Shown: in pieces, positions 12,286 to 57,171 of the stretch
How the letters are laid out: the number at the start of each line of letters is the position of its first letter
How positions within the stretch are numbered: the stretch's first letter is position 1
Virus record (IMG/VR): IMGVR_UViG_3300027782_000025
Span: 62,001 to 126,000 of that record
Reading direction: 5' to 3' (one strand)
Length of the DNA: 64,000 nt
Notes under the pieces: generated by a model
Seen by the model: only the letters and a program-made list of their open reading frames with translations
The model's database searches: none
What the model was told of the DNA's origin: nothing
Made by a program: the position numbers and the translations under genes

Positions 12286-12286
12286 A

Positions 12287-13099: not shown

Positions 13100-13890
13100 T
13101 TAATCGATAGTGACTTTTCGATGTGTTCTACTGACATTGATTCTGAATAATGTAATCTCTTAATGCGAGTCATTAAATTTGCTGAAACGAATGGGTTAAC
13201 TTGAGAATGATGTATCTTTCTTGAAATTACAGAAAATCCCAATAATCCAAACACTCTTTCATAAAACTCTAGTGGCAATACTACTTTTATATTATCCCAA
13301 GGCTTTATCCCCAATTTCATTGATTCGCTTGGTGTTAGAGATAAATGAGCGAATGCTAAATTAATTGGTGAAAAATCATGTGTACCATTAACCGCTGAAA
13401 ATGGATGCGTTCTTATAAAGATCCTACCATCGCTGTGGATTACGGTTTTTATTTCTTCTAATATTTCGATAAAGCCTGACAAATCGGTATGATCTAATAC
13501 ATCATAAAGTATCGCCAATTTAAAAGGTGCTAAATCTACAATCTTGGCCCAATCATCATAACAATTAGCGGTTTTTGTTTTAGCTTTGTCATATCCTACA
13601 GCCTTCCTGCCGGTACTATTTAGTGCAGCTATTAAATCACCATCTCCGCAGCCATAATCTAGCATCTTTACATCTAACGCAGCGGCCGGCAGCATAGAAA
13701 CCTGTTCGATGCCCCTTATTATCTTGGCGCCACTGACTACAGAAGCCATTTGGTCAAACTCTGAAGATCCACGAGGCCAAAGCTCTGAATATATGTCTGG
13801 ACAATCATGATTTGAATCGGTTATGTCAAAACCACCAGACAAGCCTGGTAGTGATTTTATAGCAGCGATTAAAATCTGTAATGTATCCAT
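13069..13890 (-). CDS. class I SAM-dependent methyltransferase
   Basis: MLDYGCGDG motif I, LYDVLDH, GRIFIR. Confidence 0.85.
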   Translation of the reverse strand: MDTLQILIAAIKSLPGLSGGFDITDSNHDCPDIYSELWPRGSSEFDQMASVVSGAKIIRGIEQVSMLPAAALDVKMLDYGCGDGDLIAALNSTGRKAVGYDKAKTKTANCYDDWAKIVDLAPFKLAILYDVLDHTDLSGFIEILEEIKTVIHSDGRIFIRTHPFSAVNGTHDFSPINLAFAHLSLTPSESMKLGIKPWDNIKVVLPLEFYERVFGLLGFSVISRKIHHSQVNPFVSANLMTRIKRLHYSESMSVEHIEKSLSINYIDFLLAPV

Positions 13891-21221: not shown

Positions 21222-23723
21222 TTATGTTGCTATGGTAATCTGACCATAGGAGAATTCACTAAACAATATAACCTGCGATTTAATATCCATCCGACGGATC
21301 TTAGCACCAGGCCAGAGTTTGAGACCACATTTTCCAAATGGTTGATTTGTAGGGTTAAAATCGATTGGGTAATATGGTGTATTGATCGATACCGGCGTCG
21401 TTAATAAAGAATTTAACGCAGGACTAGGTGGGATTAATAATCCATTCCACCAAATCCAAACTTGCCCGTCACGCAACATTACCTCTATCTTGTTCCAATA
21501 TTCACCCGAATCTCCGCCACTAACTGCGCCACCATCGTAAAACTTAAATCCACGCGGTGTCGCTGCGGGCTGCGTACCGACGCCTGACCATACGCCAGAC
21601 TGCGAATATACCGCACTAACAGCATAGCCTGGCGCTAGGCCACGCACAAAATCATCTACCTCATCAGTTGGAGAGTCGAACTGGTATGGGAGACTCATGT
21701 CTAATTGTCCGACCATAAATTGCAATGTAACCAAATTAGTGGTTTGGTCGAAGCCATATTGTAATCGCACAACTGGATTGTCATAGTCTTGATGTAATAA
21801 TTCTACAACATCACCAATATTACCCTCATATGGCTTATTGTCAGGATAACCGTTAGCTAGCACCAACACATCACAACCGCTTATCGTCAGCGACGAAGGA
21901 ACACCTAACACAGGATTAAGAATTTCAGAAGGAAATACGAATTTTTTATTATAGTTGTATACCAGATTCTCATCAGCGCCTGGATTTAATATTCTTATGG
22001 TGCCGAAGGGAGGTAATTCTGTAAAATCGGCGCCACAAACCATAACATAATTTAAACCATTAATATTTCCGATGGAAACAACCTTCATATACTTTTCAGT
22101 AGTGCTGTCGATTTTGGCTCTAAGTAATATGTCGATTGGAGGAAACACGCCGACATAATCAATAATCTCTGGTCTTCCTATATCTGCTCTTATAAGTGCA
22201 TTAGTCATGCTTTCTCTATGCCATAAATAAACGGGCCTCTCCGAAAAATTACCGCCAGAGTAAATGCTCTTGACGATCTTCATGCCTGGCATTAAAGTGT
22301 CTATAACAGCTCTATGTTGCTGATTATAGTCGCCGTCTGGCGCTGTGCCGCCAGCTACGATTTCGTCGAACATTAGCAATGGGTCATCTAATCCGGTGAG
22401 ACCCCACTGGCTCGGTTCAAAATCTCTTGAAGCTGTTTCGGTTATAGCACTAGTTCGAGGATCAAATGTGCCCGCTGGTTCGATTTCTTCCCTCGCTACT
22501 ACAATATCACCAAATTGAACTGAACCTATGTTGGTCCATACATAGTTCGGATTTAAACTTGGTTTCTTAGAAAAGAAATAACGATATTGGGTTTGCCCAG
22601 CGATTTCACCGACCTGATAAGCATAGAGGTCAATTAATGTACCAACTGGTAGTAAGTCGATAGTCTGATCTAACACTAAGACTTGAGGATTAACACCTGA
22701 TTGTGGATTTTGCGGATTTATGATCTGCCAGACGTTTCTAGCCGAGTAACAGTCGCCAGTTGCAAGAGATTTATCGAGGTTCCATTCTCTAACCATGTAG
22801 ACATTTGTACTTAATACTTCGTTTGTATAATCTACAATTACTGCAGGTTTTTTGGTTATTAAAATACCCTTATATAAGAGTGCTCCCAAGCCGTCCGCAT
22901 TGATATTTGGATCCATCTTAAATGTTATGGCATTGCCGTTCAGATCAAGACCAGTATACCAAATCACCTCTGGAATGCCTCTAGCGCCTGGAGTAAATGC
23001 CCAGCCGATTTCCGTCACAGAACTATTTAAAGAATTCCTCTTTAAGATTAATTCGAATTCAGCCAAACCAGGAGTAATAGCGTCATCATATCTCTTAAAG
23101 ATAAGCGCTGGATAAATGCCTTTGTTGCCCAAGGTCTTAGCGGGGTTTGTGGTATCAACAATAGTTGATTCTGGGAATAGATATACTTTCATTTCACCAT
23201 AAACATCGGTGCCAACTAGCTTGCCGGCGCATGTTGGTGGTCTGATCGCGGCCACTTCAGTCTCATCCTGCACCCAAAAAATCTGATTGCATGATTCACA
23301 AGCGCAATTCAATGGGATCGGGCTATCGACTGTAAACCTGACCACGTTTCCGATACGTTCTAGACTGATGAATTCAGTACCAGCGGCCAATATTATATCG
23401 CCCTGCATCCAACCGCCGTCGTTTGGAAATCCGGCGCCTTGGAATCCAAGTACGCCCAGTCTTGTCTGCAAAATAGCATCGACTTTACATTTATCATCGG
23501 CAGACATCAAACCAGGCGAATCACATGTAGCAACAGGTACTGGATCTTCAGCAATATGTGTTGGGCCGTGAAAACTAGGATAAACAACTTGGCTGTCACG
23601 GTAATAGAGGGTTCTTAACTCTGCATCATATTGGTATCCAGTGGTTATACCATTTGGTCCTAGAACCTGGATAAATTGTGCATCTTTTAATTGGGAATGA
23701 TTCGGTATCTGATATAGTGCCAT
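21222..23723 (-). CDS. putative tail/fibre structural protein
   Basis: 833 aa; 'ATCDSPGLMSADDKCKVD' fibre-type motif; C-terminal beta-sandwich/lectin-like segment (WNKIEVMLRDGQVWIWWNG...GKCGLKLW). Confidence 0.6.
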   Translation of the reverse strand: MALYQIPNHSQLKDAQFIQVLGPNGITTGYQYDAELRTLYYRDSQVVYPSFHGPTHIAEDPVPVATCDSPGLMSADDKCKVDAILQTRLGVLGFQGAGFPNDGGWMQGDIILAAGTEFISLERIGNVVRFTVDSPIPLNCACESCNQIFWVQDETEVAAIRPPTCAGKLVGTDVYGEMKVYLFPESTIVDTTNPAKTLGNKGIYPALIFKRYDDAITPGLAEFELILKRNSLNSSVTEIGWAFTPGARGIPEVIWYTGLDLNGNAITFKMDPNINADGLGALLYKGILITKKPAVIVDYTNEVLSTNVYMVREWNLDKSLATGDCYSARNVWQIINPQNPQSGVNPQVLVLDQTIDLLPVGTLIDLYAYQVGEIAGQTQYRYFFSKKPSLNPNYVWTNIGSVQFGDIVVAREEIEPAGTFDPRTSAITETASRDFEPSQWGLTGLDDPLLMFDEIVAGGTAPDGDYNQQHRAVIDTLMPGMKIVKSIYSGGNFSERPVYLWHRESMTNALIRADIGRPEIIDYVGVFPPIDILLRAKIDSTTEKYMKVVSIGNINGLNYVMVCGADFTELPPFGTIRILNPGADENLVYNYNKKFVFPSEILNPVLGVPSSLTISGCDVLVLANGYPDNKPYEGNIGDVVELLHQDYDNPVVRLQYGFDQTTNLVTLQFMVGQLDMSLPYQFDSPTDEVDDFVRGLAPGYAVSAVYSQSGVWSGVGTQPAATPRGFKFYDGGAVSGGDSGEYWNKIEVMLRDGQVWIWWNGLLIPPSPALNSLLTTPVSINTPYYPIDFNPTNQPFGKCGLKLWPGAKIRRMDIKSQVILFSEFSYGQITIAT

Positions 23724-23724
23724 A

Positions 23725-24600
23725 TTACTTTACCGATTTATCGGTCTCCTCTTTGCTTTCTGCCTGCTGGTTCTCTTGATGCTGTATCGCACGCTTAACG
23801 AAGTCAGTGGCTTTATCCAAAATCCAATGTCTACTTTCAAATGTAGCATTGTTTCTAGCGTACGGTATATTTTTACCGAACTTATGGTATTCAACTAGAT
23901 CATCAGGTACTATTAACCCACCGTATCTCATTTGAAATGCCAATGGTAATAATCCAATTAATTGGTTAAAACTTGCTTCTTTATTATCGACTTTTAAGCT
24001 AGCCGGCTTAGTAGCCTCAGTGTAATCGTTCGCACCTTCATCGCCATGAGCAAACACACCGAAAATTTTTCCGGCATAATGGTTCTTTAAATCATTTTTA
24101 TATTTCCCAGATAATTCATGCTTAGCGGTCAATTTTGAATTTTTTATGTCGTCACCGAATATTTCCTTAGCCTTTTCTACCGGCAGAGTCAAATTAATAC
24201 AAACCAACCGATCAAAAAAGGACTTTACGACCGAGGTGACAGTATACCAATGGATCGGGGTGAATGTTAATATGATGTCTGCAGACATTAAACCATTATA
24301 GACATCCTTCTCATACATGTAATCTTTAACGTCGTCTTTTAAAGAGTAACAGCTGCATGGGAAATGGCACTGAAATCCATTGGCAGTAGATATACATCCT
24401 TTGCATGGCTGTATACGCGGCTCATCGTCTATCACTGTAAGATCATATAGTATATAGTCAGCTTCTGGGCCATCGTTTATAATGTGGCTCACGATCTTGC
24501 TAGTTTTAGACTTACCGCCAGAACAACTGTTTTCATTTCTAGGAGAACCACTTATAATAGCGATCTTCTTCCTAGAATTAGCAAAGGTTAATGGTATCAT
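23725..24600 (-). CDS. flavodoxin-like / iron-sulfur flavoprotein (FMN reductase family)
   Basis: IAIISGSPR, IQPCKGC...QCHFPCSC, TPIHWY...KSFFDRL. Confidence 0.85.
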   Translation of the reverse strand: MIPLTFANSRKKIAIISGSPRNENSCSGGKSKTSKIVSHIINDGPEADYILYDLTVIDDEPRIQPCKGCISTANGFQCHFPCSCYSLKDDVKDYMYEKDVYNGLMSADIILTFTPIHWYTVTSVVKSFFDRLVCINLTLPVEKAKEIFGDDIKNSKLTAKHELSGKYKNDLKNHYAGKIFGVFAHGDEGANDYTEATKPASLKVDNKEASFNQLIGLLPLAFQMRYGGLIVPDDLVEYHKFGKNIPYARNNATFESRHWILDKATDFVKRAIQHQENQQAESKEETDKSVK

Positions 24601-25628
24601 AAGGCCTCAATAATGTATCTTCTGAGTCTCGGGCTGTAATATGTTATGGTTTTTTTGCCAGCTTCAGCTATCATTTCATCTTGTTCAGCTACCATATCGT
24701 CAACTATCGGCAGGTCGTCATATTCTGACTTTAGCGGCGCCATTTCTATGCGATCGTCATAATTAGACGCCTTTGTATAATCGATGTTAGGTGCTTTAGA
24801 TGCGACTTGTGCTGGTGCAACAGGCTTAACTTGTGCTGGTGCAACAGGCTTAACTGGTGCTGGTGCAACAGGCTTAACTGGTGCTGGCACAGGCGGCACT
24901 GGCTTAACTGGCGTTGGTAAAACAGGTACGGGGGCAACAGACGGAGCAGCTTGGATGACTTCATTATCTATGGTGTCAGCATATTCCTTTTCTGCTTTTA
25001 ATTGCTGTGTCTCTTTATTTTTAAGATTTTCAGCCTTGTCTTTAATCTGTGCGTATCTGTCTTTGACCTCTTTGTCTTGCGGTGTCGCAAGCGTTTTATC
25101 GCTCGGTACCTCTTTAGCTAGCTTTACAGTCTCTATATCGTAGGCTCTTTCTACATTTCTGATGTCTTTGTTAGCATCTACTGCTTGCGGCGCGGCTTTA
25201 AGCTGCGCAGCCCTATGAACCCTAGCTTTCGATGCCTTCTCAGCGTCCTTACTAAGAACACCATATACAGGAAATAAGACGCCAGTCTTGAGATCAGCTA
25301 TATGGTCAGAGTCATATGTTCTATAAGCTTGATCAGAAAATATGTGCGGCAGCGCTCTCGCCCCAAACCTGTACCTTCGCTTTAATCCCCTAATATTACT
25401 TAATTCTGGTAATAATTTTCTTAGATCTAATTGATCCCTTTTACTTATATAATGTAGGTTTATGCCGCCAACTAGTTGATTTCCGGTACTGGGGTGCTTA
25501 TATGTTCCTAAGACAAGCACATCAGGCTTAGGGTCGGTATGATAATTTTCGTAATCGAACTGCCAACGATGCCCTTCGCCAGCTTCGAATATTATATGGC
25601 CTGGAATGGTCAAAGAGTTCAAAATCAT
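24597..25628 (-). CDS. DNA end protector (T4 gp2-like) domain with Pro/Ala-rich tail
   Basis: DPKPDVLVLG...GGINLHYI...AYRTY resembles gp2 'GLNLHYL' family; low-complexity C-half. Confidence 0.55.
   Translation of the reverse strand: MILNSLTIPGHIIFEAGEGHRWQFDYENYHTDPKPDVLVLGTYKHPSTGNQLVGGINLHYISKRDQLDLRKLLPELSNIRGLKRRYRFGARALPHIFSDQAYRTYDSDHIADLKTGVLFPVYGVLSKDAEKASKARVHRAAQLKAAPQAVDANKDIRNVERAYDIETVKLAKEVPSDKTLATPQDKEVKDRYAQIKDKAENLKNKETQQLKAEKEYADTIDNEVIQAAPSVAPVPVLPTPVKPVPPVPAPVKPVAPAPVKPVAPAQVKPVAPAQVASKAPNIDYTKASNYDDRIEMAPLKSEYDDLPIVDDMVAEQDEMIAEAGKKTITYYSPRLRRYIIEAL
24805..24888. repeat. 24-bp tandem repeat x3.5 (KPVAPA[PQ]V)
   Basis: act[tg]gtgctggtgcaacaggctta units. Confidence 0.9.
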
Positions 25629-27553
25629 ATGATAATGTTTCTTCTATCTTTTATGCATTCTATAATCAAGTTATGCCGAATCATTGTATTATATCTAAGC
25701 AATTCATTTAATTGCTCCATCATTATTTTTCTATCTATTTTATCTTCGATGATCAGAGGCACCAATTTGCCATTAATGCTTTCACTTAGTGAATCATCTT
25801 GAGCAAGTGATTTTCGTTCAGCTAAAACGACCATCTCGAACTTTTGAGTCGCGCTAGCTAGATCACCCGTTACTTTTTGCCTAGATATTGATTGACCGTT
25901 CGCTTTTGCCATTCTAGAAGGATTAATAGGGATCTTTACTATTCTCTCTTCATCCCCTTCACCAATTATGAAGCCTTCCTCGAATTCTTTAGCCTCTGCA
26001 GCCATTTCTTCGACTATGCCTGGGACCCTCAGAGCTTGGCATCCTTCCCTCAGCCATATACTTTCCCATGTTTCATCAGTACCTGGTACTAATTCGATTT
26101 CTGGGTCTTCATAAGGCGACCACCAACCAGGCATCTCTCGGGGGATTTTTAAATTTTCACGCATGTCGCCTCTACCTGGATAATCTGAGGCGATCTGGCC
26201 ATAGGATCTAATTAAGAATCTAAATTGGTTAGATGTCATATACCCTTTGATATTATCTAACTTTTTTGCATCGACATCTAAAAATTTAGTACCTCTTAGT
26301 ATATCACGCAAATCATAATTTAAACACATTTTTAAGACATGGTTGAAAAGTTCTTTAGGTTTTGGAGCTTCAGAATCCTCTTCGACCCTAGTATCTGCAA
26401 GTTGCATTTCTTCTGCTTCGCCTGTTTCGGCTGATGGTCTACCACCACTAATGCTAGCTATTTTGGTCCTTGTCTTTCTGTCAGGTGTGGTTATTGTATG
26501 GCCAGGTTTTAATCCTGTCTTTGTGCCCAAAATCATAGCCGATGCCCCTTCGGCACGTGATTCGAGCTTTTCTAGATCTTGTTTAGCTAATTCTATTCTT
26601 TCTTGGTCTCCTTCTTCGTAAGCAGCTGCTAGTTCGCTTCCAAACATATAATATTCGCTGCTATAATGTCCAAATGGATTTCCGCTAGCACGGTCTGTTT
26701 TTGATTCATATCTATATTCTTCAGATACTACATCAATAGCTCTGTAAATCTCTTCTGGATTAGTCATCTGTAACAATGACGGTATACCATATACTTCTTT
26801 TCTAATCCAACTGCTCTCGGCTTCTGCTCTAAGTTTTATCGCTCTCTCTTGGCGTGCTTGGAAAGCCTCCTGCGATTCGCCAGCATTGGGTGTTTTAGCC
26901 GTTACAGGCAGGCGCACTTTTACTTGACCGGCAGGCGTCACGTAATAGACGGATTTATCACTCAACAACATATCGATCCTTGTATCGCTTCCTACACCAC
27001 CGACCATAGCACCTTCTACTTGAGTAGCCGCCCAAGATATAAATGGACTAAGAGATCTATCGGCACCAGGCTGTAATAATTTAACTAATGCCACAGAGCC
27101 ATTTTGATAGCAATCCTCTACCAAATTCTCATCCATATACTTTCCTGTAGATGATGCTACTTTTTTTGCAGCCCTCTTTGCAATTCTATATAGAGGTGAT
27201 CCAAATTTACCAGAAGCCGGTCCTTTATTACCGCCTCTCTGATGAAAATTCGAACCATCACTTAACCCAGCAAAGGCAATGTATACTTCAGAATCAGTCC
27301 ATCTAGGGGCTTTACCACCAGGAACGAAGTCTTCTGGTGCTTCATAACCAACACGTGATGTCCAAGGCTTATTAACCCACCGTGAATTCACAGTCATTGG
27401 GCCGACAGTATGATAAAGACAGTCCTCAGCAAATTCTCTATTATAATTAGAAGAGTACGGATCCTTCCATTGCGCTTGGGATTTATCACCAGCCACAGCG
27501 GCCTCTTTTAGAACCTTCGCCAGCTTATGCGATAATTTATTTAAAAAAGACAT
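25625..27553 (-). CDS. atypical large sigma70-family factor with insertions
   Basis: region 2 PLYRIAKR...VEDCYQNGSVALVKLL...DRSLSPFISWAATQVEGAM; region 3-like ASIS...MQLADTR; region 4 MTSNQFRFLIRSYG ... ISRQKVTGDLASATQKF; AGGAG RBS. Confidence 0.65.
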   Translation of the reverse strand: MSFLNKLSHKLAKVLKEAAVAGDKSQAQWKDPYSSNYNREFAEDCLYHTVGPMTVNSRWVNKPWTSRVGYEAPEDFVPGGKAPRWTDSEVYIAFAGLSDGSNFHQRGGNKGPASGKFGSPLYRIAKRAAKKVASSTGKYMDENLVEDCYQNGSVALVKLLQPGADRSLSPFISWAATQVEGAMVGGVGSDTRIDMLLSDKSVYYVTPAGQVKVRLPVTAKTPNAGESQEAFQARQERAIKLRAEAESSWIRKEVYGIPSLLQMTNPEEIYRAIDVVSEEYRYESKTDRASGNPFGHYSSEYYMFGSELAAAYEEGDQERIELAKQDLEKLESRAEGASAMILGTKTGLKPGHTITTPDRKTRTKIASISGGRPSAETGEAEEMQLADTRVEEDSEAPKPKELFNHVLKMCLNYDLRDILRGTKFLDVDAKKLDNIKGYMTSNQFRFLIRSYGQIASDYPGRGDMRENLKIPREMPGWWSPYEDPEIELVPGTDETWESIWLREGCQALRVPGIVEEMAAEAKEFEEGFIIGEGDEERIVKIPINPSRMAKANGQSISRQKVTGDLASATQKFEMVVLAERKSLAQDDSLSESINGKLVPLIIEDKIDRKIMMEQLNELLRYNTMIRHNLIIECIKDRRNIII

Positions 27554-27577
27554 GCAATGCTCCTATTAGTTATATAA

Positions 27578-27587
27578 TATATTTAAC
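27578..27587 (-). promoter_or_regulatory. putative late promoter (GTTAAATATT)
   Basis: TAAATA about 27 nt upstream of the 642-aa sigma-like gene. Confidence 0.4.
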
Positions 27588-28257
27588 TAATCCATATTTT
27601 CTTTAATTTGCGTAGTGCCTTAGACACAGCATTAATATCTTTCTTCTCAGCCTCTCCGATAGCGTTGGTTACTTTACCGACTGGCTCAGATAAATATGTT
27701 AAAAATTCCATATAATCTATGTTGTTCTTTAATATCAATAATTGACCAGCAGACTTTAGCTTGTTAAGCATAAATATTTTAAAATTATTGCCAGCGAGAT
27801 CACTTAATATATTGTGGCTTTTTTTAAATAGCAAGCTATCTAGCATTATATTTCCAGAATATTGAGTCCTATAAAACGTCCCATTTTCAGGATTGATTTT
27901 TATCCCATTACCAAAGGCTGATCCAGTATAATCATCGTTTTGCACTTTCGCTTTTAATTTTTCCACAGACGCCCTGTTAAGGACAGAATCAGGAGTTAGT
28001 GTGAAGATTAAATCATTACTCGAATTTTCCAAAGCAGTCACGTAAGCCTGAATTTCATTAGTCGAATGGAATAAGTCTAGAACTTTAATATCTTTCTTGG
28101 TACTCCTATCGCTTTCGCTCAATTGACGATAATCAGATATCTTGTTAACAATGATTAATTCATCACCATCGACCTTTATCTCATCGTATAAAAGCTTTAA
28201 GTATTTATCTCGAACATGGTGGAAGACATCTATGACTGCGATATAAGAAGTATTCAT
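27583..28257 (-). CDS. degenerate glycosyltransferase family 2-like protein
   Basis: GT2 N-terminal pattern (YIAVI...ELIIVN...ALENSSNDLIFTLTPDSVL) but DxD replaced by TPD. Confidence 0.5.
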   Translation of the reverse strand: MNTSYIAVIDVFHHVRDKYLKLLYDEIKVDGDELIIVNKISDYRQLSESDRSTKKDIKVLDLFHSTNEIQAYVTALENSSNDLIFTLTPDSVLNRASVEKLKAKVQNDDYTGSAFGNGIKINPENGTFYRTQYSGNIMLDSLLFKKSHNILSDLAGNNFKIFMLNKLKSAGQLLILKNNIDYMEFLTYLSEPVGKVTNAIGEAEKKDINAVSKALRKLKKIWIS

Positions 28258-28273
28258 GATAAATATATATACG

Positions 28274-28303
28274 AAGATGGCCGCTATTTCTAGCGACCAT
28301 CTT
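28274..28303 (-). terminator. stem-loop, probable terminator
   Basis: minus strand AAGATGGTCGCTA-GAAA-TAGCGGCCATCTT, 13-bp stem with one G-U, GNRA loop, 20 nt after stop of 531-aa gene. Confidence 0.7.
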
Positions 28304-28322
28304 AAAGAATCCTTTTTACTAA

Positions 28323-29918
28323 TTATTTAGGATATTCTTTTGGTTTGCCAGTGAGACCATTCTTAGGCTGGCGGTTGTTTAAACCTTTGGCGGTGACTTC
28401 CTTGAAATCGGACATTGAAGGCTCTTTACTGCCTTCTTCTGTCTTCTTTCCTTCAGCTTTATCGATCATATATCCGGTCTTCATGACTTCTTGAGTGTTC
28501 TCAAAAAGAGGATTAAAGCTTGGATATCGATTCTTGAGCATAGTTAGCGCTTGGCCGACTTTCTGCTTGCTGCTGGTGATTTTGCAATAACCGGCGTTGC
28601 AATCCCAAGATTCGTTTAATTTTGCGCCAATAATCCTTCGACCATAACGTGCATTCTCTTTAATAATGTTTCGTGCTTCGGTGAAAAATCTAGTGAGTTT
28701 ACGCTGTAATCCTTCAGCCATATCATCCTTTTTGCCACCACCACACTTTCCGCTACCACATGAACCGTGAGCTTCTTTGCACTTGCAGAATGGTGGGCAC
28801 TTGCATTCTCCACCTTTAGCACATTCACAACCACTATCTTCGTCGCCACCGTAGCCCCAGCCTTCACCGGTCGATGGCCTCTTGCTTGGATCGAGTCTAG
28901 AAGGGTCATTTGGGTCATATGGCGCTTCTGGCGCTTCTGGTCTAGTCGTAGAGAAATCTCTCCTAGCAGGTTCGGGGTAAGGATTTTCGCGGAAATTGGT
29001 GCCAGTCATAGGGTTATCTTCGGGGTCTAACGGAGTGCCGTCTTCGCCAAGGCCCCAGCCATCCCCCATACCACAATTACCCTCTGGAGACTCATCTTCG
29101 AATTCATCTTCGCCGCCGATGCCATAGCCATGATTTGATGGATTATCGTCGGGATTTAACTTAGAAGGATTTGCTGGATCAAATGGCATTTCTGGCTTTT
29201 CCGCAGGCTTCTCATATAACTCATGGCCTGGATTTTTGTGATACTTTTTTGTATCGATGTCAGCGGGAGTCCATTCTTCGCCCATTCCCATACCCATGTC
29301 GGATTCTGAGATGTAGAATCTGTGGATGCCGTCATGATGCTCGGTAAAAACGAATTCTTTATTATTCTCGATCAATTGGCGAAACATGTCTTCAGATAAC
29401 GGATAATCAAAGCCGTTGGCTCGGCAGACATTTTTAAATTCTAGCATATTGACCGAACGACGGGTACCAGCATATTGGTTAAACATGTCTTGGAGATTAT
29501 ATTCTTCTCCAATCATACTGCCGATTGAATCTGGATTCCAGCCTTCTAATTTAGGTTCAGGAGCAGCGCCAGTGTAATCATAGCCTGTTGCGAATTCGCC
29601 AGAAGCACCATCGTTGGTTGGGCCGTCTGGCCAATCGTGTCCGACCTTTTCTTGGAAGCCGTCCGAAGCTTCGCCGTGGGAGCTGCTGGTTTCAGAACCA
29701 GCAACCACACCTTTATCATTAACTCTGTTTTTATTTTTAGGATGCGTTTGTTCGGTGCCGCCGTGGCCGCCCTTAAGTTGGCGTCTCTCACCACCCACAA
29801 CGCCTGCGCCTGAGCCTTCTACTCTCTTCATCTTAGGAGATCCTGGCTTGTAACCAGCAGCGTCAAAAGGTGGTTCATAATTTTCACTAATTCTTCTTCG
29901 GTCATTATTACTAGCCAT
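28323..29918 (-). CDS. Gly/acidic low-complexity protein with metallothionein-like Cys cluster (probable internal head protein)
   Basis: 531 aa; internal duplication PxxP[FY]DPxxPSxL[ND]P...G[YW]GxGG; CECxxGGxCKCPPFCKC; many [IL]-x-E sites; AAGGAG RBS. Confidence 0.65.
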   Translation of the reverse strand: MASNNDRRRISENYEPPFDAAGYKPGSPKMKRVEGSGAGVVGGERRQLKGGHGGTEQTHPKNKNRVNDKGVVAGSETSSSHGEASDGFQEKVGHDWPDGPTNDGASGEFATGYDYTGAAPEPKLEGWNPDSIGSMIGEEYNLQDMFNQYAGTRRSVNMLEFKNVCRANGFDYPLSEDMFRQLIENNKEFVFTEHHDGIHRFYISESDMGMGMGEEWTPADIDTKKYHKNPGHELYEKPAEKPEMPFDPANPSKLNPDDNPSNHGYGIGGEDEFEDESPEGNCGMGDGWGLGEDGTPLDPEDNPMTGTNFRENPYPEPARRDFSTTRPEAPEAPYDPNDPSRLDPSKRPSTGEGWGYGGDEDSGCECAKGGECKCPPFCKCKEAHGSCGSGKCGGGKKDDMAEGLQRKLTRFFTEARNIIKENARYGRRIIGAKLNESWDCNAGYCKITSSKQKVGQALTMLKNRYPSFNPLFENTQEVMKTGYMIDKAEGKKTEEGSKEPSMSDFKEVTAKGLNNRQPKNGLTGKPKEYPK

Positions 29919-29939: not shown

Positions 29940-29948
29940 TATATTTAT
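29940..29948 (-). promoter_or_regulatory. putative late promoter (ATAAATATA)
   Basis: TAAATATA about 22 nt upstream of 531-aa gene. Confidence 0.45.
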
Positions 29949-30523: not shown

Positions 30524-30990
30524 TTTGTCTCAGGAATTTTACCCTGAACCTCTATATCTTCAACATTTAAATATTCTATATAGGCTTTGCCTTCGGCAAG
30601 CATATATTCGTATTGTATTTTTCCGTCGAGAAACTTTAGCAACAAATTGTTAATATCGGCATTGTCAGCCAACAAAATCGTTCTTCGCGGATAGGTTAAA
30701 GTATTTCCTGTGAAATATCGTTCGATCGATGCAATATATTCTGTATTTTCATCCCTTATGACAGCGCTGGGAAAATTAATAACTAAAAATTCCATCAGCT
30801 TTTCTTTTAAACCAGCAACTTCTATATCGGGCAATAATTCTACCATTATCCTTGCATTATTACTGCAGCTCTTAGATGCTCTGAATTTTTCGATAAAGAC
30901 ACCGTAGAGATTTTCGTCGGTTTCTTTTAACCATTGCTGCCAGAGTGGATGAGATGCTAAAGAACAATATAGCTCAGTTTTTATTTTCAT
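30481..30990 (-). CDS. hypothetical protein
   Basis: 169 aa, ATGA-coupled to fibre gene. Confidence 0.6.
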   Translation of the reverse strand: MKIKTELYCSLASHPLWQQWLKETDENLYGVFIEKFRASKSCSNNARIMVELLPDIEVAGLKEKLMEFLVINFPSAVIRDENTEYIASIERYFTGNTLTYPRRTILLADNADINNLLLKFLDGKIQYEYMLAEGKAYIEYLNVEDIEVQGKIPETKWLLKRIPKKPIRD

Positions 30991-33900
30991 AGAATCAGCC
31001 AGTACACACCAACTTGTCCTAGATAAAAATCCTTCATCATAAATCTAAAACTACTTACGCTCGGCAGCATCACAGTTTTTCCATCTATGCTAGGCATAGC
31101 AATTAAAGTACCAGTTATACCAGTCGCTTTTTCAGCGTCTATAATCAGATAAACATCTCCTATTTCATTTTCTATTTTAGTCGACTTGCTAAGATCTAGC
31201 TTTTGAAGGTCGACAGCGGCAAGGATTATTACCTTGTCCTTATATGAATCGGCTCGTTCAATCGAAATGCTGATTTTACCGCTCGAATTTTTTGGATTTT
31301 TAGAAGGTATCCAAACCCTTATATCGCCACCGTCATGCATAAATTCGACATACTTATTCTTATACCTATTGGCAGCATCCGCCAACGATTTGAAAGAACC
31401 CTCAGAAAGTAATGACTTTACTATCGCTTTTGAATTATATTGGTAGAGCACTCTTATATCTGCTCTATAATAACCATCGATCCTTGATGACATGTTATCG
31501 ATTTTAACTCTATACTGATTTGTCGGCAAATTTAGCGTTATGGCCGTATCTTCATTGGCATTGGTCTTAACATTTACTTCGATCGACGATACCGTTTCAT
31601 AATTAGCATCCTTAATAGTCACACCGCTAATAAGTTTATTAGTAGCAATCGCTCTAAAATTATTAGTCGAACTAGCTACAGTTATGTTCTTATAGGCCGG
31701 TATAAAAGCATTGGTAGAATATTTAAAAGAATAACCCCACCTGTTTAATGAATCAGTCGATAACAAAGACGCATAAAACTTAGCTATTGGAATTGTACCG
31801 TCAGCGCATGCCAATGTCGCATTCGTAGCAGACAGTTTATTAAAATTAAGACCAAAACAATTGTTAAAACTTGCACTAGTTGAGCTCATACTTATTGCGG
31901 CGTTTAATTGAGCTGATAAATATGAACTATCGAGAGCGGCTTTTCGGCCGGCATTGGCGGTGTTTATAACGCCACCCAGAGCGCCATTGGCACTAAAGAA
32001 ATAAACCGGAAGAATATCTGCAGTAGCTTTAAACAATGGCGAATTACAAGTCGGACTGTTTAATAAATCCACCAAATCACTGATAGCCATAGTTGCTCGA
32101 CCCATAACACCTGGCGAACACTCATTGGGCTTAGCTAATGCCGAAATTTTGGTCTGAGCCGACCTAGTTCCTGTGTCAAACGGCGCGACAGCCGTCACCA
32201 TGCTAGTCTCCAAAGTCGCATCGATATTATCATTTATGTAATTAGGCGGATTCAGAGAACTATCTAGATATCTGGCCGTATAATAAACACCGGCGGCCGG
32301 TTGGTTAACAGGATTTGGACTATAACTACTATTACAACCGATAATCATCCTTTCAGCGCTAAAGAAAGAGCCAGTCTGATCTTTAGCGCTGCTGAAACCT
32401 AGAGCACTACTGACTTTATTGACGATTAGCTTAAGACCTAAATCATTAGTCGGAAATAATTGGCCAGCAACGTTTAATCTAAAGCCCGGCACCACGATAC
32501 TCGGCAGTCCTGGGTTTTGCTTCCCTGTTTTAAGATCCATGGTCGGCTGAAATTCTATATAAGATATGGGAGAAGTGTCAGGGAAAGACTTACCAATCGA
32601 TTTTTTGACTGCTTCTCTTATATTAGAAACAGATATGGTTTCTTCATTAAAATAATAGCCTTCATTACCGTTAAACGGATAACGCACGGCATCATTGTCA
32701 TCCACAATTCTATATAGTTCACGCGACAATAATTTACCCTTTAGCTTTAATAGTTCAGCACAGCTTACGATATTGCTTGAATTAGCGTTAGGGAAATTAC
32801 TCCTATATTCTTGGCTTCCGGTTCGTGCATCCTGATACATATTGAATTGGCCGCCATCAGCTTTGCATCTGTCTCTTAAATCTATCCAGTACCTCTCCAA
32901 TCCATCCATCTGAGGAAAAATCGCATAAGCAAGATCAAACGTTAATTGACGACCAGTTAGATTCTCTGGAACATTGCCTGTAAACCCAATATCGAAAGTA
33001 TACTTCCCTGGGGCCACTAATCTAGGATCATTATCAGCTGGTGGCCATGATGGTTTAGTCTGAACATCTCCAAAAATACCAGTAAGATCAAAAGTAGACC
33101 TGTTAGAAACTAATTCGAATACTGGATCATTATGAGGTAATCGAGCATTCTTAGAATACTTCGGTACACTCGGAAGAGCCTCTAATATTTTCGGTACCGT
33201 AGACCTTGTAATCGATACCTTAATGGGTAATATCTGTGATAATGAACCATCAGCATCATTGGTTACAAACACATTTAGCACAAAATCGCCAGCTACTGTT
33301 GGTGTTAGATTAAATGAAAATGTATTTGGGGTCACGAATGTAACAGCCAAAGAAGAAGTAGGAAAGGCTGTAGATAGAGTCTTACCGACATCATCGATAA
33401 TACCAACCAGTACGGTACCGTTTGGATATCCAACAGCTAGTAAATTAAACGGCCCGAGTGTGAAAGGCTCATCTAAATAAGCATTGATATTTTGACCACT
33501 ATAAAGTGGATATGTTAGAAAAAGCCCAGAAGATGGCGGAGCAGCAATAGTTACTTTATTTAACGTTACTGAAGAGCTAGAAGATAACATCGGGGCCATT
33601 GTCATCGTATTTCCCGCAGCGACTTGAACGCTTCTTAGCGAGCAAGCATTTACATAAATATCATAAGTTCCAGTTTTTGAATATGCGGTGATAAGGAATT
33701 TGCCTACATTGTTGGTATCGACCCCATAAGCGATGGTTTGTGCGAAATCTGGTAAGAAGAATCTTTCCCAAGAGCCACCACCATCTGGTGATACTATAAC
33801 ATCGATATCACCCACGATAATAAACACGCCATTACCATAAGACAGATTTAGCTTAACACGCTCATACACATCAAAGGCAAATGCTAGTGATAAGCTCCAA

Positions 33901-40517: not shown

Positions 40518-40526
40518 TATATTTAA
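40518..40526 (-). promoter_or_regulatory. putative late promoter (TTAAATATA)
   Basis: TAAATATA ahead of GAGG RBS of NTase gene. Confidence 0.5.
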
Positions 40527-50699: not shown

Positions 50700-51422
50700 T
50701 TACGAAAGACCGAAAAATTTATTAATCTCTTCAACCACCATGTTTTGGTAAACAGACGGCGAAAATTTCTTTTTCATAGCCTTTAATGGAGTCATTCTTT
50801 TTTTAAGATCCTCTTGGATATTAAGAATAGCACCATTAACGCTAGGCTCAGCCACAGCATCCCAAGTCACGAATGTGTAGCCTGGTAAAACCCTATAAGT
50901 CTCTTGGCCATTGCTTTCGCTAACTACTTCCATATCGCCAACACCACGAGAGCTGATGCCGACTCTCACTTTATGTTCGAATAGGCCACGCAAGCAAGCA
51001 CCGCAAGGTAATTTATGAAGTATCTCTGCTTCACCAAAAACCTTTCGTCCTTCCATCCAGACATTCGTCATTAGATGGCTAACTCTATCAAGGTGAATTT
51101 TAGCATCACTAGGATGATCGAATTCGCCAAGTACTGCTCTAGCCTTGATATCTTCTTGGATTTGCTTGATAGCTGGCGCTAAGACTTCATTGGTCGAATA
51201 ATAGCGACCATTGCCGTTAGGTTGATCGCCCATCTGGATAAGACCTGTCACTCGTAGAACTGGAGTACCATTTCCATTGCGATCTTCCCTGATAGCATTC
51301 TTCTTATCTAAGATTTTAAATTCATGAGTATCCCTGATCAGCTTCATGCCGGCAGGGATTACTCCTGTTTCTGCGATTACTCTTCGATTCTGAAAACACG
51401 ATGTTCTTCGACTAGGTATCAT
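50700..51422 (-). CDS. prohead maturation protease (T4 gp21-like)
   Basis: NGNGRYY, LGEFDHP, RVSH, GISSRGVG, TWDAVAEPS; ATG 51422 with GGAG RBS (track 51452). Confidence 0.95.
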   Translation of the reverse strand: MIPSRRTSCFQNRRVIAETGVIPAGMKLIRDTHEFKILDKKNAIREDRNGNGTPVLRVTGLIQMGDQPNGNGRYYSTNEVLAPAIKQIQEDIKARAVLGEFDHPSDAKIHLDRVSHLMTNVWMEGRKVFGEAEILHKLPCGACLRGLFEHKVRVGISSRGVGDMEVVSESNGQETYRVLPGYTFVTWDAVAEPSVNGAILNIQEDLKKRMTPLKAMKKKFSPSVYQNMVVEEINKFFGLS

Positions 51423-51432
51423 TATTTGCTCC

Positions 51433-54400
51433 TTAAAGGTCAATATTGTCAAGATCGTCGCGATCGCCGATTCCCTCGACTGATTCGTCGTTCTTACGCT
51501 TGTTGACCTTCGGTTTTACATCTGTGCGTGGGTCTTCTTCGGCTTGTTTATGATACTTGGGCTTGCTAGGGTCCGTAATATCATTATCTTCATTAAGACC
51601 GTCGAAATCTTCGTCTTCGTCCTCAGTATCGATGTTGTCATCGTCCGACTCGTCTTCATACTCTTCATCATCGGCCGATTCATCATCCGCATATTCTTCA
51701 CCGTCAGCGAGTTCATCACCGTCCTCGATGGCTTCGTCATCCATTGACTCACCGCCATCAATTAGTTCCTCATCACCAAATTCATCATCGAGATCTTCTT
51801 CTTCCATTCCGGACATTTCCATGTCGTCATCTTCGATGTCTGAAGCATCCATATTCATTTCATCATCGCTTTCAAGACCCAATTCATCCTTAATCTCGTC
51901 GATTTCATCATGAATGCTATCAATTTCAGCTCTCATTTCATGGTCTGATCCACCTTCATCGCCGTATTCGTCTCCGCCTAGTTCGAGATCTAATGAACTC
52001 ATGTCGCCATCGGAGCCATCTTCGAGGCCATCTTCTTCGCCGGCCATGTCATCAGTGCTTTCAAACTCATCTTCGCCACCAATTTCGTCGGCGTCATCAA
52101 GGTCGCCTTCGCCTTCAAGATCTTGATCTACATCGCCCATGTCGACTCCTTCTTCGTCGTCGACAGCCGAAAAATCAGGCATATCTTCTTCCTCCGAAGG
52201 CGATGATATGGAAGGCTCAGTAGCTTCTACAGGTTTCATTGCATCAATTTCTTCTTCGAATTCTTCATTTAAAAAGTTTCGTTCAGATTCGGAGATTGGT
52301 GAAAGCTGGTCGATACTACCTGCTAACCACTCACGAAATAATGAAGAATTTCCTTTGATTACCCTAGCAGCAGCTAAAGCACTATTTTGAACTTTTTTAG
52401 GAACGGGTATTTCGACTGTTCCGTCTTCTGACATAACGACTGCAGGTAATTCTGCATTACCATGGTCAAGAGCAAACTTGGCGCCATTGAAGACCCCATA
52501 AAGGACATCGCCGTTTTTAGAAGTCCAGCGGATAGCGTTTTCGCTTACTGGCTTTGCAGCCTCTTCATTTTTCTTACCAGCCTTGCCAAATGAATTTCTG
52601 CTTAGCCCGCGTTTTCGCATTATCGGGGATTTCCTCTGGCTTTCCTTGACTGCAGCCCGAGTGTTTTGGTAAGTGTCGACTATTTGATTAACAGCTAGAG
52701 GAAGCATAGATTGATTTAGATTCAAAACGACCTTTCGAATGCAAGATTCAACGATCTTGGGAAGTCCTTTTACCAATTGTTCATTGGTCAAATTATTAGC
52801 TATTACATGCCTGTCGACCATCTTAACTATCATTTGGATCTTTGAATTATCATTAATCGCAGTCTTACCATATTGACCCATTATAGCTCTATCGCCTTTG
52901 GAAACATTGTAGGCATACTGATCAGTAGATTCGTTTATCGGTCGTTTATTTTTATTACGGCTTTCTAGTCTTGGGGGGCCACCTGGGGCTGCGCCTGGAG
53001 CTGGTGCTGCACCTGGGGCTGCGCCTGGAGCTGGTGCTGCGCCGGGAGCGGGAGCTGCACCAGGGGCTGGTGGTGCGCCGGCTGTAGGTGGCTCGTCGAG
53101 TAGTGCAGATAAATCATCTTCGCCGCCGGCTTCGTCTGGCATGCCAAGATCGTCTTCACCTTCTTCACTTGCTGCTGAACTCTTCCCGCCGATTTGAATC
53201 AGAGGAGAATTAATATTTATAACTGGTGCGCCCGAAGGAGCTTCTTCCTCTTCGGTATCGACTTCTGGCAGCCCAGAATCAGTGGTATTTGGCATTTGAT
53301 CGAAATCCGCAAGATTTTCATTCGAAGTCACTTCCTCTTGGATAGTGGCTATCAAATCTTCCGCTTCATAAATCGTTGCATCATCAACAGCCTTATCTTT
53401 CAGCTTGTTTATTAAGCCGTCGAGCTTACTCTTTAATTCATGGTTTTCCATGATTCTAGGAGTCTTATCTCTTAGCTGGCTTAAAGTAGTCGCAAGCGCT
53501 TCCGCAGCTATTTCTCTGTTTCCGATGGTTTCAAAAATAAGGTCCAAGAATTTATTATAAACTGGTTCGAATTCCTGAGCTTCAGATAATATAGCAACAT
53601 TCTGTGCAAGATTATAATTTTCAACAGCGCTTGCAATATTCTTCCATTCTTTAACGATCTTGCTGCGATTTACTCGCAGGTTCGTCTTATGGAATAATGT
53701 CGCCACATCTTCACATAATTGTGGGTTAAAGATCGCCTTTGCTGCAAGTGCGTTAGAAACGAGTTCTTTGGTTTGCGATCTATTCAAGAGAGTAAATTCT
53801 TCGTACTCTTCTAAAAATGGTGCAACCAAATTAACCGCTTTGTCTACATTACCTTCGGATATCAAAGAGGCAACATCATAAATGCGCCCTTGAAAACCTT
53901 GGCTAAGATATGCTTCCATCGCTACTTTACGCATAGTCTTTGCTGTTAACTTCTTAGTAGCCCATTTTGAAACGGGCAGATTAAACTGTTCGCCATCAAT
54001 GAAATGGCCACCAATAGCGTGATTATCTTCAACAATCACTCTGGTAGAAATCGATTCTACCACACAAGCAACGATTTTTTTCTTGATGTCTTCGTTAATT
54101 TGTTCTGGAGTTCTTACCTTAATACGGCGCACAACGCCGTCTTTACTGCAAACCATCCCAGATTCTGGGATAACGCGGCCGGTAAAGCGTTGAGCCTTCA
54201 TACGTCCAAAAGTAGATTGCATACCCTTTTGGTCATTCCGTTCAATAGCGTTAATCAAACGCAAGCATGATTCTTCGAAAAGACCAGCTTTTTGACTTTC
54301 TACTATAGAGATAGGTTGAATATCGGTGATATTTATTGCACCATGTGACTTATGGTGTTTAGCGATATAAAAGGTGTTAGATCCTACATCTTCGATGTAA

Positions 54401-57135: not shown

Positions 57136-57158
57136 ATGCCGCTCCAAGCCCTAAAATA

Positions 57159-57171
57159 AATATATTTACAA
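57159..57171 (-). promoter_or_regulatory. putative late promoter of portal/head operon (TTGTAAATATATT)
   Basis: identical 13-mer at 9791-9803; T4-late-like. Confidence 0.6.

What the first reader, a model, noticed from the sequence alone, without database searches (positions are those of the whole stretch)
25625..27553. Giant sigma70-like protein in a late structural operon: candidate virion-packaged sigma factor
Seen: recognisable sigma70 elements in the right order. Region 2 (~27196-27003) reads PLYRIAKR...VEDCYQNGSVALVKLL...FISWAATQVEGAM (compare sigma LxxIAKxY...DLIQEGxIGL...FxTYAxxxIRGA[IM]). A region-3-like 'ASIS...MQLAD' follows. Region 4 is split into MTSNQFRFLIRSYG (~26239) and ISRQKVTGDLASATQKF (~25890) by a >100-aa insertion. 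The gene lies behind a TAAATA motif, is coupled to a gp2-like gene, and has [LI]-x-E sites at both ends (VLKE|AA; LSE|S, IIE|D) like those T4 gp21 cleaves in head proteins. Established: T4 packages and injects processed internal proteins. Inference: a sigma factor made late, packaged, trimmed and injected to redirect host RNA polymerase at the start of infection.
Basis: partly seen in the sequence, partly recalled or inferred. Interest (0 to 1): 0.85.

Follow-up and report, generated by a model that had tools for sequence, protein, structure and literature searches.

The report
Sigma-like phage protein paired with gp2
A 642-residue protein of an uncultured freshwater T4-like jumbo phage carries a real but very divergent sigma-factor core-binding domain, lacks a normal sigma region 4, and is always encoded overlapping or abutting the DNA-end protector gp2, so it may be a transcription factor delivered with the phage DNA, though that is unproven.

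Summary
The ORF (window 25625-27553, minus strand, 642 aa) is real. It founds a phage-only family: 70 clusters at 50% identity, all metagenomic and unnamed.

**Confirmed.** Sigma70 region 1.2/2 is present at residues ~78-196.
- The family N-terminal profile aligns to E. coli sigmas at hhalign E 5e-5.
- 14 of 56 members hit Pfam Sigma70_r2, one above the curated cut-off.
- The only two PDB profile hits are FliA and SigB, in register.

**Not confirmed.** Region 4 is not supported. Residues 398-642 fold confidently (pLDDT 90, pTM 0.89) into a domain with no helix-turn-helix and no match in PDB, AlphaFold DB or ESM Atlas. The supposed ">100-aa insertion" is the best-conserved part of that domain. 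"Region 3" lies in a disordered linker.

**Context for the injected-sigma idea.**
- The gene is directly followed by a gp2 homologue (overlapping or abutting) in 8 of 8 further loci examined, as in the window.
- A 17-residue N-terminal helix ending hydrophobic-x-Glu is conserved in 46 of 56 members.
- The phage encodes a gp21-type (S77) prohead protease.
- A TAAATATA element, enriched upstream of genes, precedes this gene and the portal gene.

None of this proves packaging. I rate "injected sigma-like factor" as the best single reading, at about 0.35.

The parts
25625..27553 (-). ORF of 642 aa (71.9 kDa, pI 5.6): divergent sigma70-family protein, founder of an unnamed phage-only family
27578..27585 (-). 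TAAATATA promoter-like element. It overlaps the stop codon of the upstream glycosyltransferase gene and ends 24 nt before the ATG.
   Evidence: 14 of 50 genomic copies lie within 40 nt upstream of same-strand starts, including the portal gene
27560..27564 (-). AGGAG ribosome-binding site, 6 nt before the ATG
   Evidence: read from the sequence
27503..27553 (-). Residues 1-17: conserved amphipathic N-terminal helix ending L-K-E. Candidate propeptide or capsid-targeting signal.
   Evidence: hydrophobic-x-E ending at residue 14-19 in 46 of 56 members; helix 3-23, low pLDDT, not packed; T4 IPI leader for comparison
27209..27472 (-). Residues 28-115: family-specific, highly conserved, mostly non-helical N-terminal module (WKDP..YDR..AED.LYHT.GP...PRW...PGG.AP.WT). 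Its last third already aligns to sigma region 1.2.
   Evidence: mean conservation 0.60, the highest in the protein
26966..27322 (-). Residues 78-196: sigma70 region 1.2 / 2.1-2.4 (sigma-2 domain). D147, N151-G152 and L156 correspond to the core-binding DLIQEG..GL motif; F171 and W174 to the F..Y of region 2.3.
   Evidence: structural hit to the RpoS region 1.2-2 fragment 5h6x_B, Z 5.8, rmsd 2.8 A over 83 residues (within noise on its own)
26789..26995 (-). Residues 187-255: lineage-variable insertion, absent from about half of the family
   Evidence: occupancy 0.48
26543..26788 (-). Residues 256-337: conserved acidic helical region. Sigma-3-like by position only.
26363..26542 (-). Residues 338-397: predicted disordered linker with a conserved short motif (G..TG....I.T.DR......S).
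25628..26362 (-). Residues 398-642: compact family-specific alpha/beta domain ending in a prefoldin-like helix / beta-hairpin / helix. No helix-turn-helix and no known fold match.
24597..25628 (-). gp2 (DNA end protector) homologue. Its start overlaps the stop of the sigma-like gene by 4 nt. It has a proline-rich PVKPVAP repeat linker.
   Evidence: adjacency (overlap or abutment) conserved in 8 of 8 further loci
50700..51452 (-). gp21-type prohead serine protease (Peptidase_S77), the enzyme that would cut hydrophobic-x-E sites
   Evidence: phrog_207, 7e-39; PF03420, 3.3e-15

Best explanation
The gene encodes an enlarged, highly divergent member of the sigma70 superfamily. It keeps the sigma region 1.2/2 domain, the part that clamps onto the beta-prime coiled-coil of RNA polymerase core and reads the -10 element. 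It has replaced, or degraded beyond recognition, the region-4 helix-turn-helix with a family-specific C-terminal domain, joined through a long flexible conserved linker.

It forms a fixed two-gene module with the gp2 DNA-end protector inside the late/structural gene block of a clade of freshwater T4-like jumbo phages that encode no RNA polymerase of their own.

Most likely mechanism (inferred, not shown):
1. The protein is made late from a TAAATATA-type promoter together with gp2.
2. It is taken into the head, its 17-residue N-terminal helix being a targeting peptide removed by the gp21-type protease after L-K-E.
3. It leaves the virion with the DNA end and gp2.
4. It then binds host core RNA polymerase through its sigma-2 domain, so that transcription of the incoming genome starts without new protein synthesis.

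Shown: sigma-2 homology, absence of a sigma-4 fold, gp2 coupling, conserved N-terminal motif, presence of the protease, promoter-like element.
Inferred: RNA polymerase binding, late timing, packaging, cleavage, injection, target promoters.
For: **Sigma-2 homology:**

**No phage RNA polymerase:** no beta or beta-prime in the 274.6-kb record. A sigma-like protein would therefore have to use host core enzyme. Group 2 jumbo phages are known to work this way (PMC7824862).

**gp2 coupling:**
- The gene is directly followed by the gp2 homologue, overlapping or abutting, in all 8 further loci examined as in the window, down to the most distant members P0081 and P0084.
- In T4, gp2 sits in the head at the DNA ends and acts on entry (PMC3012670).
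- In T4, gene 2 is likewise overlapped by its functional partner, gene 4.

**N-terminal helix:** it ends hydrophobic-x-E at residue 14-19 in 46 of 56 members and is not packed in the model. T4 IPI has an equivalent 19-residue leader ending ITE.

**Protease and promoter:**
- An S77 protease is present.
- TAAATATA precedes this gene, the portal gene and 12 others.
- AAATAT-like elements sit at the same place in several homologues.

**Possible targets:** the left arm of the genome carries at least 16 copies of a ~30-nt promoter-like element that is not sigma70-like. Such promoters would need a dedicated specificity factor.
Against: - No direct evidence of packaging, cleavage or RNA polymerase binding.
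- No homologue exists in any cultured phage, so there is no proteomics.
- No other ORF in the 274 kb shares the N-terminal signal, whereas T4 internal proteins share theirs.
- [LI]-x-E sites are not enriched overall.
- No sigma-4 domain, so recognition of two-part promoters is unexplained.
- The phage has two smaller sigma genes, one with a canonical region 4. These could account for its phage-specific promoters.
- Foldseek does not recover sigma factors significantly from the whole-protein model.
- The host is unknown.
Confidence: 0.35

Rival explanations
1. Intracellular late sigma factor, a giant functional analogue of T4 gp55. It is not packaged. It binds host core enzyme through sigma-2 and directs transcription from the TAAATATA promoters of the structural genes. 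The C-terminal domain would replace the gp33/sliding-clamp coupling or region 4.
For: - gp55 is also a sigma-2-only factor that reads a single -10-like element (textbook knowledge).
- No gp55 homologue (phrog_234) is detectable in the 274 kb.
- A T4-late-like element is enriched upstream of genes, including the portal gene.
- Sigma-2 homology.
Against: - It does not explain the invariant coupling to gp2 or the conserved N-terminal leader.
- A late sigma placed behind its own late promoter needs another way to start.
- No similarity to gp55 itself.
- The record is only about 70% complete, so a gp55 gene may lie in the missing part.
- Two other sigma genes are available for this role.
Confidence: 0.2
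2. RNA polymerase hijacker or decoy. The sigma-2 domain is used only to occupy the beta-prime clamp helices of host core enzyme, shutting off host sigma factors or tethering polymerase. The protein does not itself specify promoters, whether or not it is packaged.
For: - The core-binding motif of region 2.2 is kept (D147, N151, G152, L156 invariant or nearly so).
- The tryptophan pair of region 2.3 that drives promoter melting in primary sigmas is not kept (alignments).
- No DNA-binding region 4.
Against: - FliA-type sigmas also lack the tryptophan pair and are functional. The family's F-I-S-[WY]-..R.I.GAM closely matches the FliA region 2.3/2.4.
- 600 residues with four conserved modules is a lot for a plug.
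Confidence: 0.12
3. Head-completion or DNA-end-associated structural protein that works with gp2 in packaging or head-tail joining. It would take the place gene 4 has next to gene 2 in T4. The sigma-2 domain would be exapted for binding DNA ends or single strands, with no role in transcription.
For: - It has the same position and overlap with gene 2 as T4 gene 4.
- T4 genes 2 and 4 are thought to act together (PMC3012670).
- The neighbours are structural genes.
Against: - No similarity to T4 gp4.
- gp4 of group 2 phages is a TnsA-like nuclease (PMC7824862), and such a gene lies elsewhere in a related locus (L009 1360-2370).
- Conservation of the RNA polymerase-binding residues of region 2.2 is not expected for a DNA-end binder.
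Confidence: 0.15

Closest known systems
Sigma70-family factors of group 3 (FliA/WhiG, SigB/F/G)
   Same: Region 1.2 end and regions 2.1-2.4 align in register. This includes PLLT.EE-like, DL..G..GL-like and F.TYA..RIRGAM-like motifs.
   Different: - About 2.5 times larger.
- An 80-residue conserved N-terminal module and a leader helix.
- No region 4 helix-turn-helix and no recognisable region 3.
- A novel 245-residue C-terminal domain.
T4 gp55 (late sigma, phrog_234)
   Same: A phage sigma reduced to the sigma-2 function. It is associated with a single A/T-rich -10-like promoter element in a T4-like phage.
   Different: No detectable sequence relation. gp55 is 185 aa, a middle gene and not linked to gene 2.
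T4 head-packaged, injected proteins (IPI-III, Alt)
   Same: - A short N-terminal leader ending hydrophobic-x-Glu (for IPI).
- A gp21-type protease in the genome.
- Late-gene context.
- Alt is of similar size and acts on host RNA polymerase on entry (textbook knowledge).
   Different: No homology. The leader is not shared with other proteins of this phage. Packaging is not shown.
T4 gene 4 - gene 2 module
   Same: The gene immediately upstream of gene 2 overlaps its start. The partnership is conserved.
   Different: The partner here is a sigma-like protein, not the gp4 nuclease.
Promoter-specificity subunits of jumbo-phage non-virion RNA polymerases (phiKZ gp68, AR9 gp226), and virion RNA polymerases of N4 and phiKZ-like phages
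   Same: Large, barely recognisable sigma-like proteins of jumbo phages. As a concept, they represent delivery of transcription machinery with the virion (PMC7598289, PMC9209446, listed).
   Different: Those phages bring their own polymerase. This phage has none in 274 kb, so it would bring only the specificity factor. No sequence or fold comparison with gp68 or gp226 was made here.

Membership tests
Sigma70 superfamily | Region 2 (Pfam PF04542) with the core-binding 2.2 motif | tested here: met
   - The target itself is sub-threshold (13.3 bits, E 0.018).
- The family profile aligns to E. coli sigmas at E 5.4e-5.
- 14 of 56 members hit PF04542; P0084 scores 32.8 bits against a cut-off of 24.
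- D147, N151, G152 and L156 are conserved.
Sigma70 superfamily | Region 4 helix-turn-helix (PF04545 / PF08281) | tested here: not met
   - There is no HTH in a pLDDT-90 model and no sigma-4 fold hit.
- hhalign gives E 0.35.
- Only two distant members show weak HTH hits. In P0081 (E 0.013) the hit aligns onto residues 539-572. In P0039 the HTH is an insertion.
- A degenerate remnant cannot be excluded.
Sigma70 superfamily | Region 3 and the 3.2 linker | tested here: inconclusive
   A helical block (256-337) followed by a 60-residue disordered conserved linker has the right topology. No significant alignment was found.
Sigma70 superfamily | Binds RNA polymerase core and confers promoter-specific initiation | not testable with these tools
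   Needs biochemistry.
T4 gp55 late sigma (phrog_234) | Sequence membership | tested here: not met
   No phrog_234 match anywhere in the genome. hhalign against T4 gp55 gives E 0.25.
T4-type head internal / injected proteins | Short N-terminal leader ending in a gp21 site (hydrophobic-x-Glu) | tested here: met
   Residues 1-17 end L-K-E. The site is positionally conserved in 46 of 56 members. The T4 IPI leader is given for comparison.
T4-type head internal / injected proteins | gp21-type (S77) prohead protease encoded by the phage | tested here: met
   Window 50700-51452: PF03420 at 3.3e-15 and phrog_207 at 7e-39.
T4-type head internal / injected proteins | Targeting leader shared by several packaged proteins | tested here: not met
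   An HMM of the leader finds only this ORF in the six-frame translation of the 274-kb record.
T4-type head internal / injected proteins | Presence in virions in processed form, and ejection | not testable with these tools
   No cultured relative.
gp2 DNA end protector (neighbouring gene) | Sequence membership (phrog_429 / T4 gp2) | tested here: met
   - BLASTP against T4 gp2 gives E 2e-5, with a shared G.NLHYI motif.
- phrog_429 gives 8.5e-4 and 2.9e-4, and it is the only hit in the genome.
- The homologues from the other loci do not reach PHROG thresholds on their own.

The most novel reading that the evidence does not exclude
A virion-delivered sigma factor. The phage would package only a promoter-specificity subunit, physically associated with gp2 at the leading DNA end. 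That subunit would capture host core RNA polymerase on entry and direct it to the phage-specific ~30-nt promoters of the left-arm early genes. This would be a third strategy, beside 'use host holoenzyme' (T4) and 'inject your own polymerase' (N4, phiKZ, crAss-like phages).
Probability: 0.25. Interest if true: 0.9.

Novelty: new variant of a known kind. Interest (0 to 1): 0.62.

Why it matters
Phages are known either to rely on host holoenzyme for their first transcripts or to inject a complete RNA polymerase. A packaged sigma-like factor would be an intermediate solution not yet described.

Even without packaging, three things are of interest:
- The family shows how far a sigma-2 domain can be embedded in a new architecture: no region 4, a new C-terminal domain, and a fixed partnership with a DNA-end-binding protein.
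- It gives an unannotated, widespread protein of freshwater jumbo phages a testable function.
- The C-terminal domain has no structural relative in PDB, AlphaFold DB clusters or the ESM Atlas.

Tried and rejected
- **Target alone against databases.** Nothing in Pfam, PDB sequences or cultured phages by tblastn.
- **Whole-protein profile against PDB.** Only noise.
- **Whole-protein model (pLDDT 73.5, pTM 0.43).** Foldseek against PDB and BFVD is not significant; sigma factors appear only among E>1 hits. The VIA wide search is dominated by generic helical bundles; the RpoS fragment ranks 36.
- **Split region 4.** Rejected after folding the C-terminal part alone and after hhalign. That run proposed a different, equally insignificant register.
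- **Target as T4 gp4 or gp55 homologue.** Rejected.
- **Family HMM in the nearest phages by capsid protein** (LR756511, Stenotrophomonas RAS14, Bacillus SP-15). Nothing found.
- **Bacterial and archaeal genomes.** Nothing found.
- **Shared capsid-targeting leader in other ORFs.** None found.
- **T4 late promoter TATAAATA.** Not enriched.
- **Metatranscriptome contigs.** Two lake RNA libraries cover parts of the gene. They carry no strand or timing information and may be DNA carry-over, so they were not used as evidence of expression timing.
Full report
**What the window is.** The window is bases 62001-126000 of a 274,625-bp IMG/VR virus record estimated at about 70% complete. It comes from freshwater or lake metagenomes.

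It is a distant T4-like jumbo phage:
- gp23-type major capsid protein at 48326-49900 (phrog_138, 1.6e-80)
- portal at 54637-57147
- large terminase at 57254-59224
- gp21-type prohead protease at 50700-51452 (phrog_207, 7e-39; Pfam Peptidase_S77, 3.3e-15)

The nearest capsid protein in GenBank phages is only 37% identical, in the uncultured 595-kb phage LR756511. No RNA polymerase beta or beta-prime is detectable. This fits the 'group 2' jumbo phages, which lack a polymerase and encode sigma factors (PMC7824862).

**The ORF and its family.** The ORF at 25625-27553 (-) is 642 aa.
- Word-based search finds 17 relatives. An exhaustive HMMER scan finds 70 cluster representatives at 50% identity, 54 of them below 1e-30, mostly 550-950 aa.
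- None carries a name or a precomputed Pfam domain.
- Five further loci lie on IMG/VR contigs of 146-408 kb.
- There is no relative in 50,697 GenBank phage records, in the three nearest phages by HMM, or in 185,579 prokaryotic genomes.

It is therefore a phage-only family, known so far only from metagenomes and without a name or Pfam assignment in the sources searched.

**Region 2 is real.** Independent lines agree:
- Pfam Sigma70_r2 against the phage's own six-frame translation picks three places. Two are small sigma genes; the third is this ORF (window 27020-27175, 13.3 bits, E 0.018, model positions 7-59 of 71).
- PHROG 15865 'sigma factor' hits residues 121-184.
- Scanning each of 56 aligned members, 14 hit Sigma70_r2, in register (residues about 113-173). 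The most distant member, P0084, scores 32.8 bits, above the curated 24.
- In NCBIfam the four families hit by most members are all sigma factors: TIGR02937, FliA/WhiG, FliA, SigB/F/G.
- hhalign of the family against five E. coli sigmas gives E 5.4e-4 with the whole-protein profile. With the N-terminal profile it gives E 5.4e-5, probability 66%. The alignment covers residues 78-196 against RpoS 64-167, that is the end of region 1.2 through region 2.4.
- The N-terminal profile has exactly two hits in 177,635 PDB sequences at E<=10, FliA and SigB, both in register.
- The whole-protein AlphaFold2 model has the expected helices (87-95, 120-136, 142-159, 171-185). It aligns to the RpoS region 1.2-2 fragment 5h6x_B at Z 5.8 and rmsd 2.8 A over 83 of 96 residues. 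On its own that is within noise.
- Language-model neighbours include 28 of 100 clusters carrying Sigma70_r2.

The core-binding motif of region 2.2 is conserved (D147, N151, G152, L156). Region 2.3/2.4 reads F-I-S-W-..-V-E-G-A-M, closest to the FliA F-E-T-Y-A-G-I-R-I-R-G-A-M.

**Regions 3 and 4 are not supported.**
- The 'ASIS...MQLAD' letters lie in residues 338-397. AlphaFold2 leaves this segment disordered (pLDDT 26-45). It does carry a conserved short motif (nearly invariant G343, G347, R359, S367).
- The C-terminal 248 residues, folded alone with 56 sequences, give a confident model (pLDDT 90.3, pTM 0.89).
- MTSNQFRFLIRSYG is one helix of that model. ISRQKVTGDLASATQKF is the start of a 29-residue helix. 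That helix pairs, through a beta-hairpin, with the 33-residue C-terminal helix, a prefoldin-like arrangement (row 9).
- There is no helix-turn-helix between them.
- Nothing significant is found by Foldseek (best E 0.79) or VIA (best Z 6.1) against PDB, or in AFDB clusters or the ESM Atlas.

One caveat applies. In the distant member P0081, a weak full-length Sigma70_r4_2 hit (E 0.013) aligns onto residues 539-572 of the target. The long helix may therefore descend from the region 4.2 recognition helix. In P0039 the HTH is an insertion.

**Context.**
- The gene's stop overlaps the start of the next gene by 4 nt. That gene is the phage's only gp2 homologue: BLASTP against T4 gp2 gives E 2e-5; phrog_429 gives 8.5e-4 and 2.9e-4; and it is the best six-frame hit of T4 gp2.
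- The gp2 homologue directly follows the gene, overlapping or abutting, in all eight other loci examined (L009, L013-L017, L021, L022). This holds although the sigma-like proteins fall to 22-30% identity.
- Six of these loci (L009, L013-L017) also keep a very conserved 833-aa protein a little further downstream (50-61% identity). It has only weak fibre-like leads.
- In T4 the gene overlapping gene 2 is gene 4. T4 genes 2 and 4 are thought to act together, with gp2 in the head at the DNA ends (PMC3012670). The target is unrelated to gp4.

**Signals.**
- TAAATATA lies at 27578-27585 (-), 24 nt before the ATG, and overlaps the stop of the upstream family 2 glycosyltransferase gene.
- In the genome, 14 of 50 copies are within 40 nt upstream of a same-strand start. 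About 1 is expected from position alone, uncorrected for AT-rich intergenic composition. The 14 include the portal and the 531-aa gene.
- Several homologues have AAATAT-like elements at the same place.
- T4's TATAAATA is not enriched.
- No gp55 homologue is found, but the record is incomplete.

**The N-terminus.** Residues 1-17 form an amphipathic helix (M-x-x-[ILF]-x-x-[KR]-[LI]-x-x-[KR]-[LF]-x-x-[LI]-x-E).
- The hydrophobic-x-E ends at residue 14-19 in 46 of 56 members.
- The helix is not packed in the model.
- T4 IPI has a 19-residue leader ending I-T-E. The cleavage specificity of gp21 and the 76-residue mature IPI are from my own knowledge.
- Against a targeting role, no other ORF in the record shares the leader.
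- [LI]-x-E sites as such are at chance frequency (10 against 8.1 +/- 2.6).

**Interpretation.**
- I consider it established that this is a divergent sigma70-superfamily protein with an intact-looking sigma-2 domain (about 0.9).
- I consider it probable that it binds host core RNA polymerase (about 0.7).
- What it does with the polymerase is open. All of this is circumstantial, so I give it 0.35.
- The rivals are a giant gp55-like late sigma (0.2), a head-completion or DNA-end protein with an exapted sigma-2 domain (0.15), and a polymerase decoy (0.12).

An observation that makes the question experimentally sharp: the left arm of the genome (outside the window) has at least 16 copies of a ~30-nt promoter-like element, TTGTTACA-N9-TGGGTTYGAAACAC. 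Each follows a hairpin and precedes a small gene. The element is unlike sigma70 promoters. Which of the three phage sigma-like proteins reads it is testable in vitro.

**Novelty.** This is a new architectural variant of a known kind (sigma70 superfamily). It has a structurally unmatched C-terminal domain and a gene partnership I found no mention of in four full-text literature searches.

Noticed in passing
G000:C1:700-27000 (left arm of the same phage record, outside the window): At least 16 copies of a ~30-nt conserved promoter-like element: (ACCCCCG)TTTGTTACAaGgtTTTGGGTTyGAAACACAC, then AGGAG and ATG. All precede small plus-strand genes, and each lies just after a GGGGTTGC...GCAACCCC hairpin. 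It is not sigma70-like and is probably an early or middle promoter class read by a phage-specific factor.
   Followed up: partly
window 27578-27585, 29940-29947, 40518-40525, 57161-57168, 2405-2412 and 9 more in the genome: TAAATATA is strongly enriched just upstream of start codons: 14 of 50 copies, against about 1 expected from position alone. It precedes the portal gene and the genes around the finding. The canonical T4 late box TATAAATA is not enriched.
   Followed up: yes
window 9826-10740 (+) and G000:C1:17497-18153 (+): Two further, smaller sigma-factor genes (304 and 218 aa; phrog_351 at 1e-10 and 4e-14). The 218-aa one has a canonical Sigma70_r4 (41 bits). No gp55-type late sigma (phrog_234) is found in the 274 kb.
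   Followed up: partly
window 28323-29918 (-): A 531-aa acidic, Gly/Pro/Glu-rich protein with a Cys-rich cluster (C.C....C.C..C.C). It lies behind its own TAAATATA and is followed by a hairpin at about 28273-28303. It is partly conserved upstream of the sigma-like gene in locus L017. It may be another internal or ejected protein.
   Followed up: no
window 21222-23723 (-): An 833-aa protein much better conserved than its neighbours: 50-61% identity in loci where the sigma-like protein is about 30%. It has no Pfam or PDB match (one faint PHROG hit, E 0.07) and only weak receptor-binding or fibre-like leads (Mtd_N, lectin).
   Followed up: partly
window 24746-24964 (-), inside the gp2-like gene: The gp2 homologue has a proline-rich tandem PVKPVAPA(P/Q)VKPVAP linker between its gp2-like N-terminal part and a short conserved C-terminus. 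T4 gp2 has its homologous part at the C-terminal half instead.
   Followed up: no
window 23725-24600 (-), 27583-28257 (-), 43917-44357 (-), 10723-13890: Metabolic-looking genes lie inside or beside the structural block:
- an FMN reductase/flavodoxin-like protein
- a family 2 glycosyltransferase directly upstream of the sigma-like gene (also present in L009)
- a cysteine-dioxygenase-like protein
- a glycosyltransferase 8 / methyltransferase cluster
   Followed up: no
window 30987-37796 (-): A 2269-aa protein with an N-terminal collagen-like G-x-x stretch and Thr/Pro-rich linkers, presumably a fibre. Its N-terminal part (residues 11-399) and C-terminal part (residues 2084-2252) are conserved in L017 just upstream of the module.
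   Followed up: no
window 25675-26672 and 28075-29229: Contigs from two lake metatranscriptome libraries match parts of the sigma-like gene and its upstream genes at 99% identity or more. This is consistent with transcription in nature, but DNA carry-over cannot be excluded and there is no timing information.
   Followed up: partly
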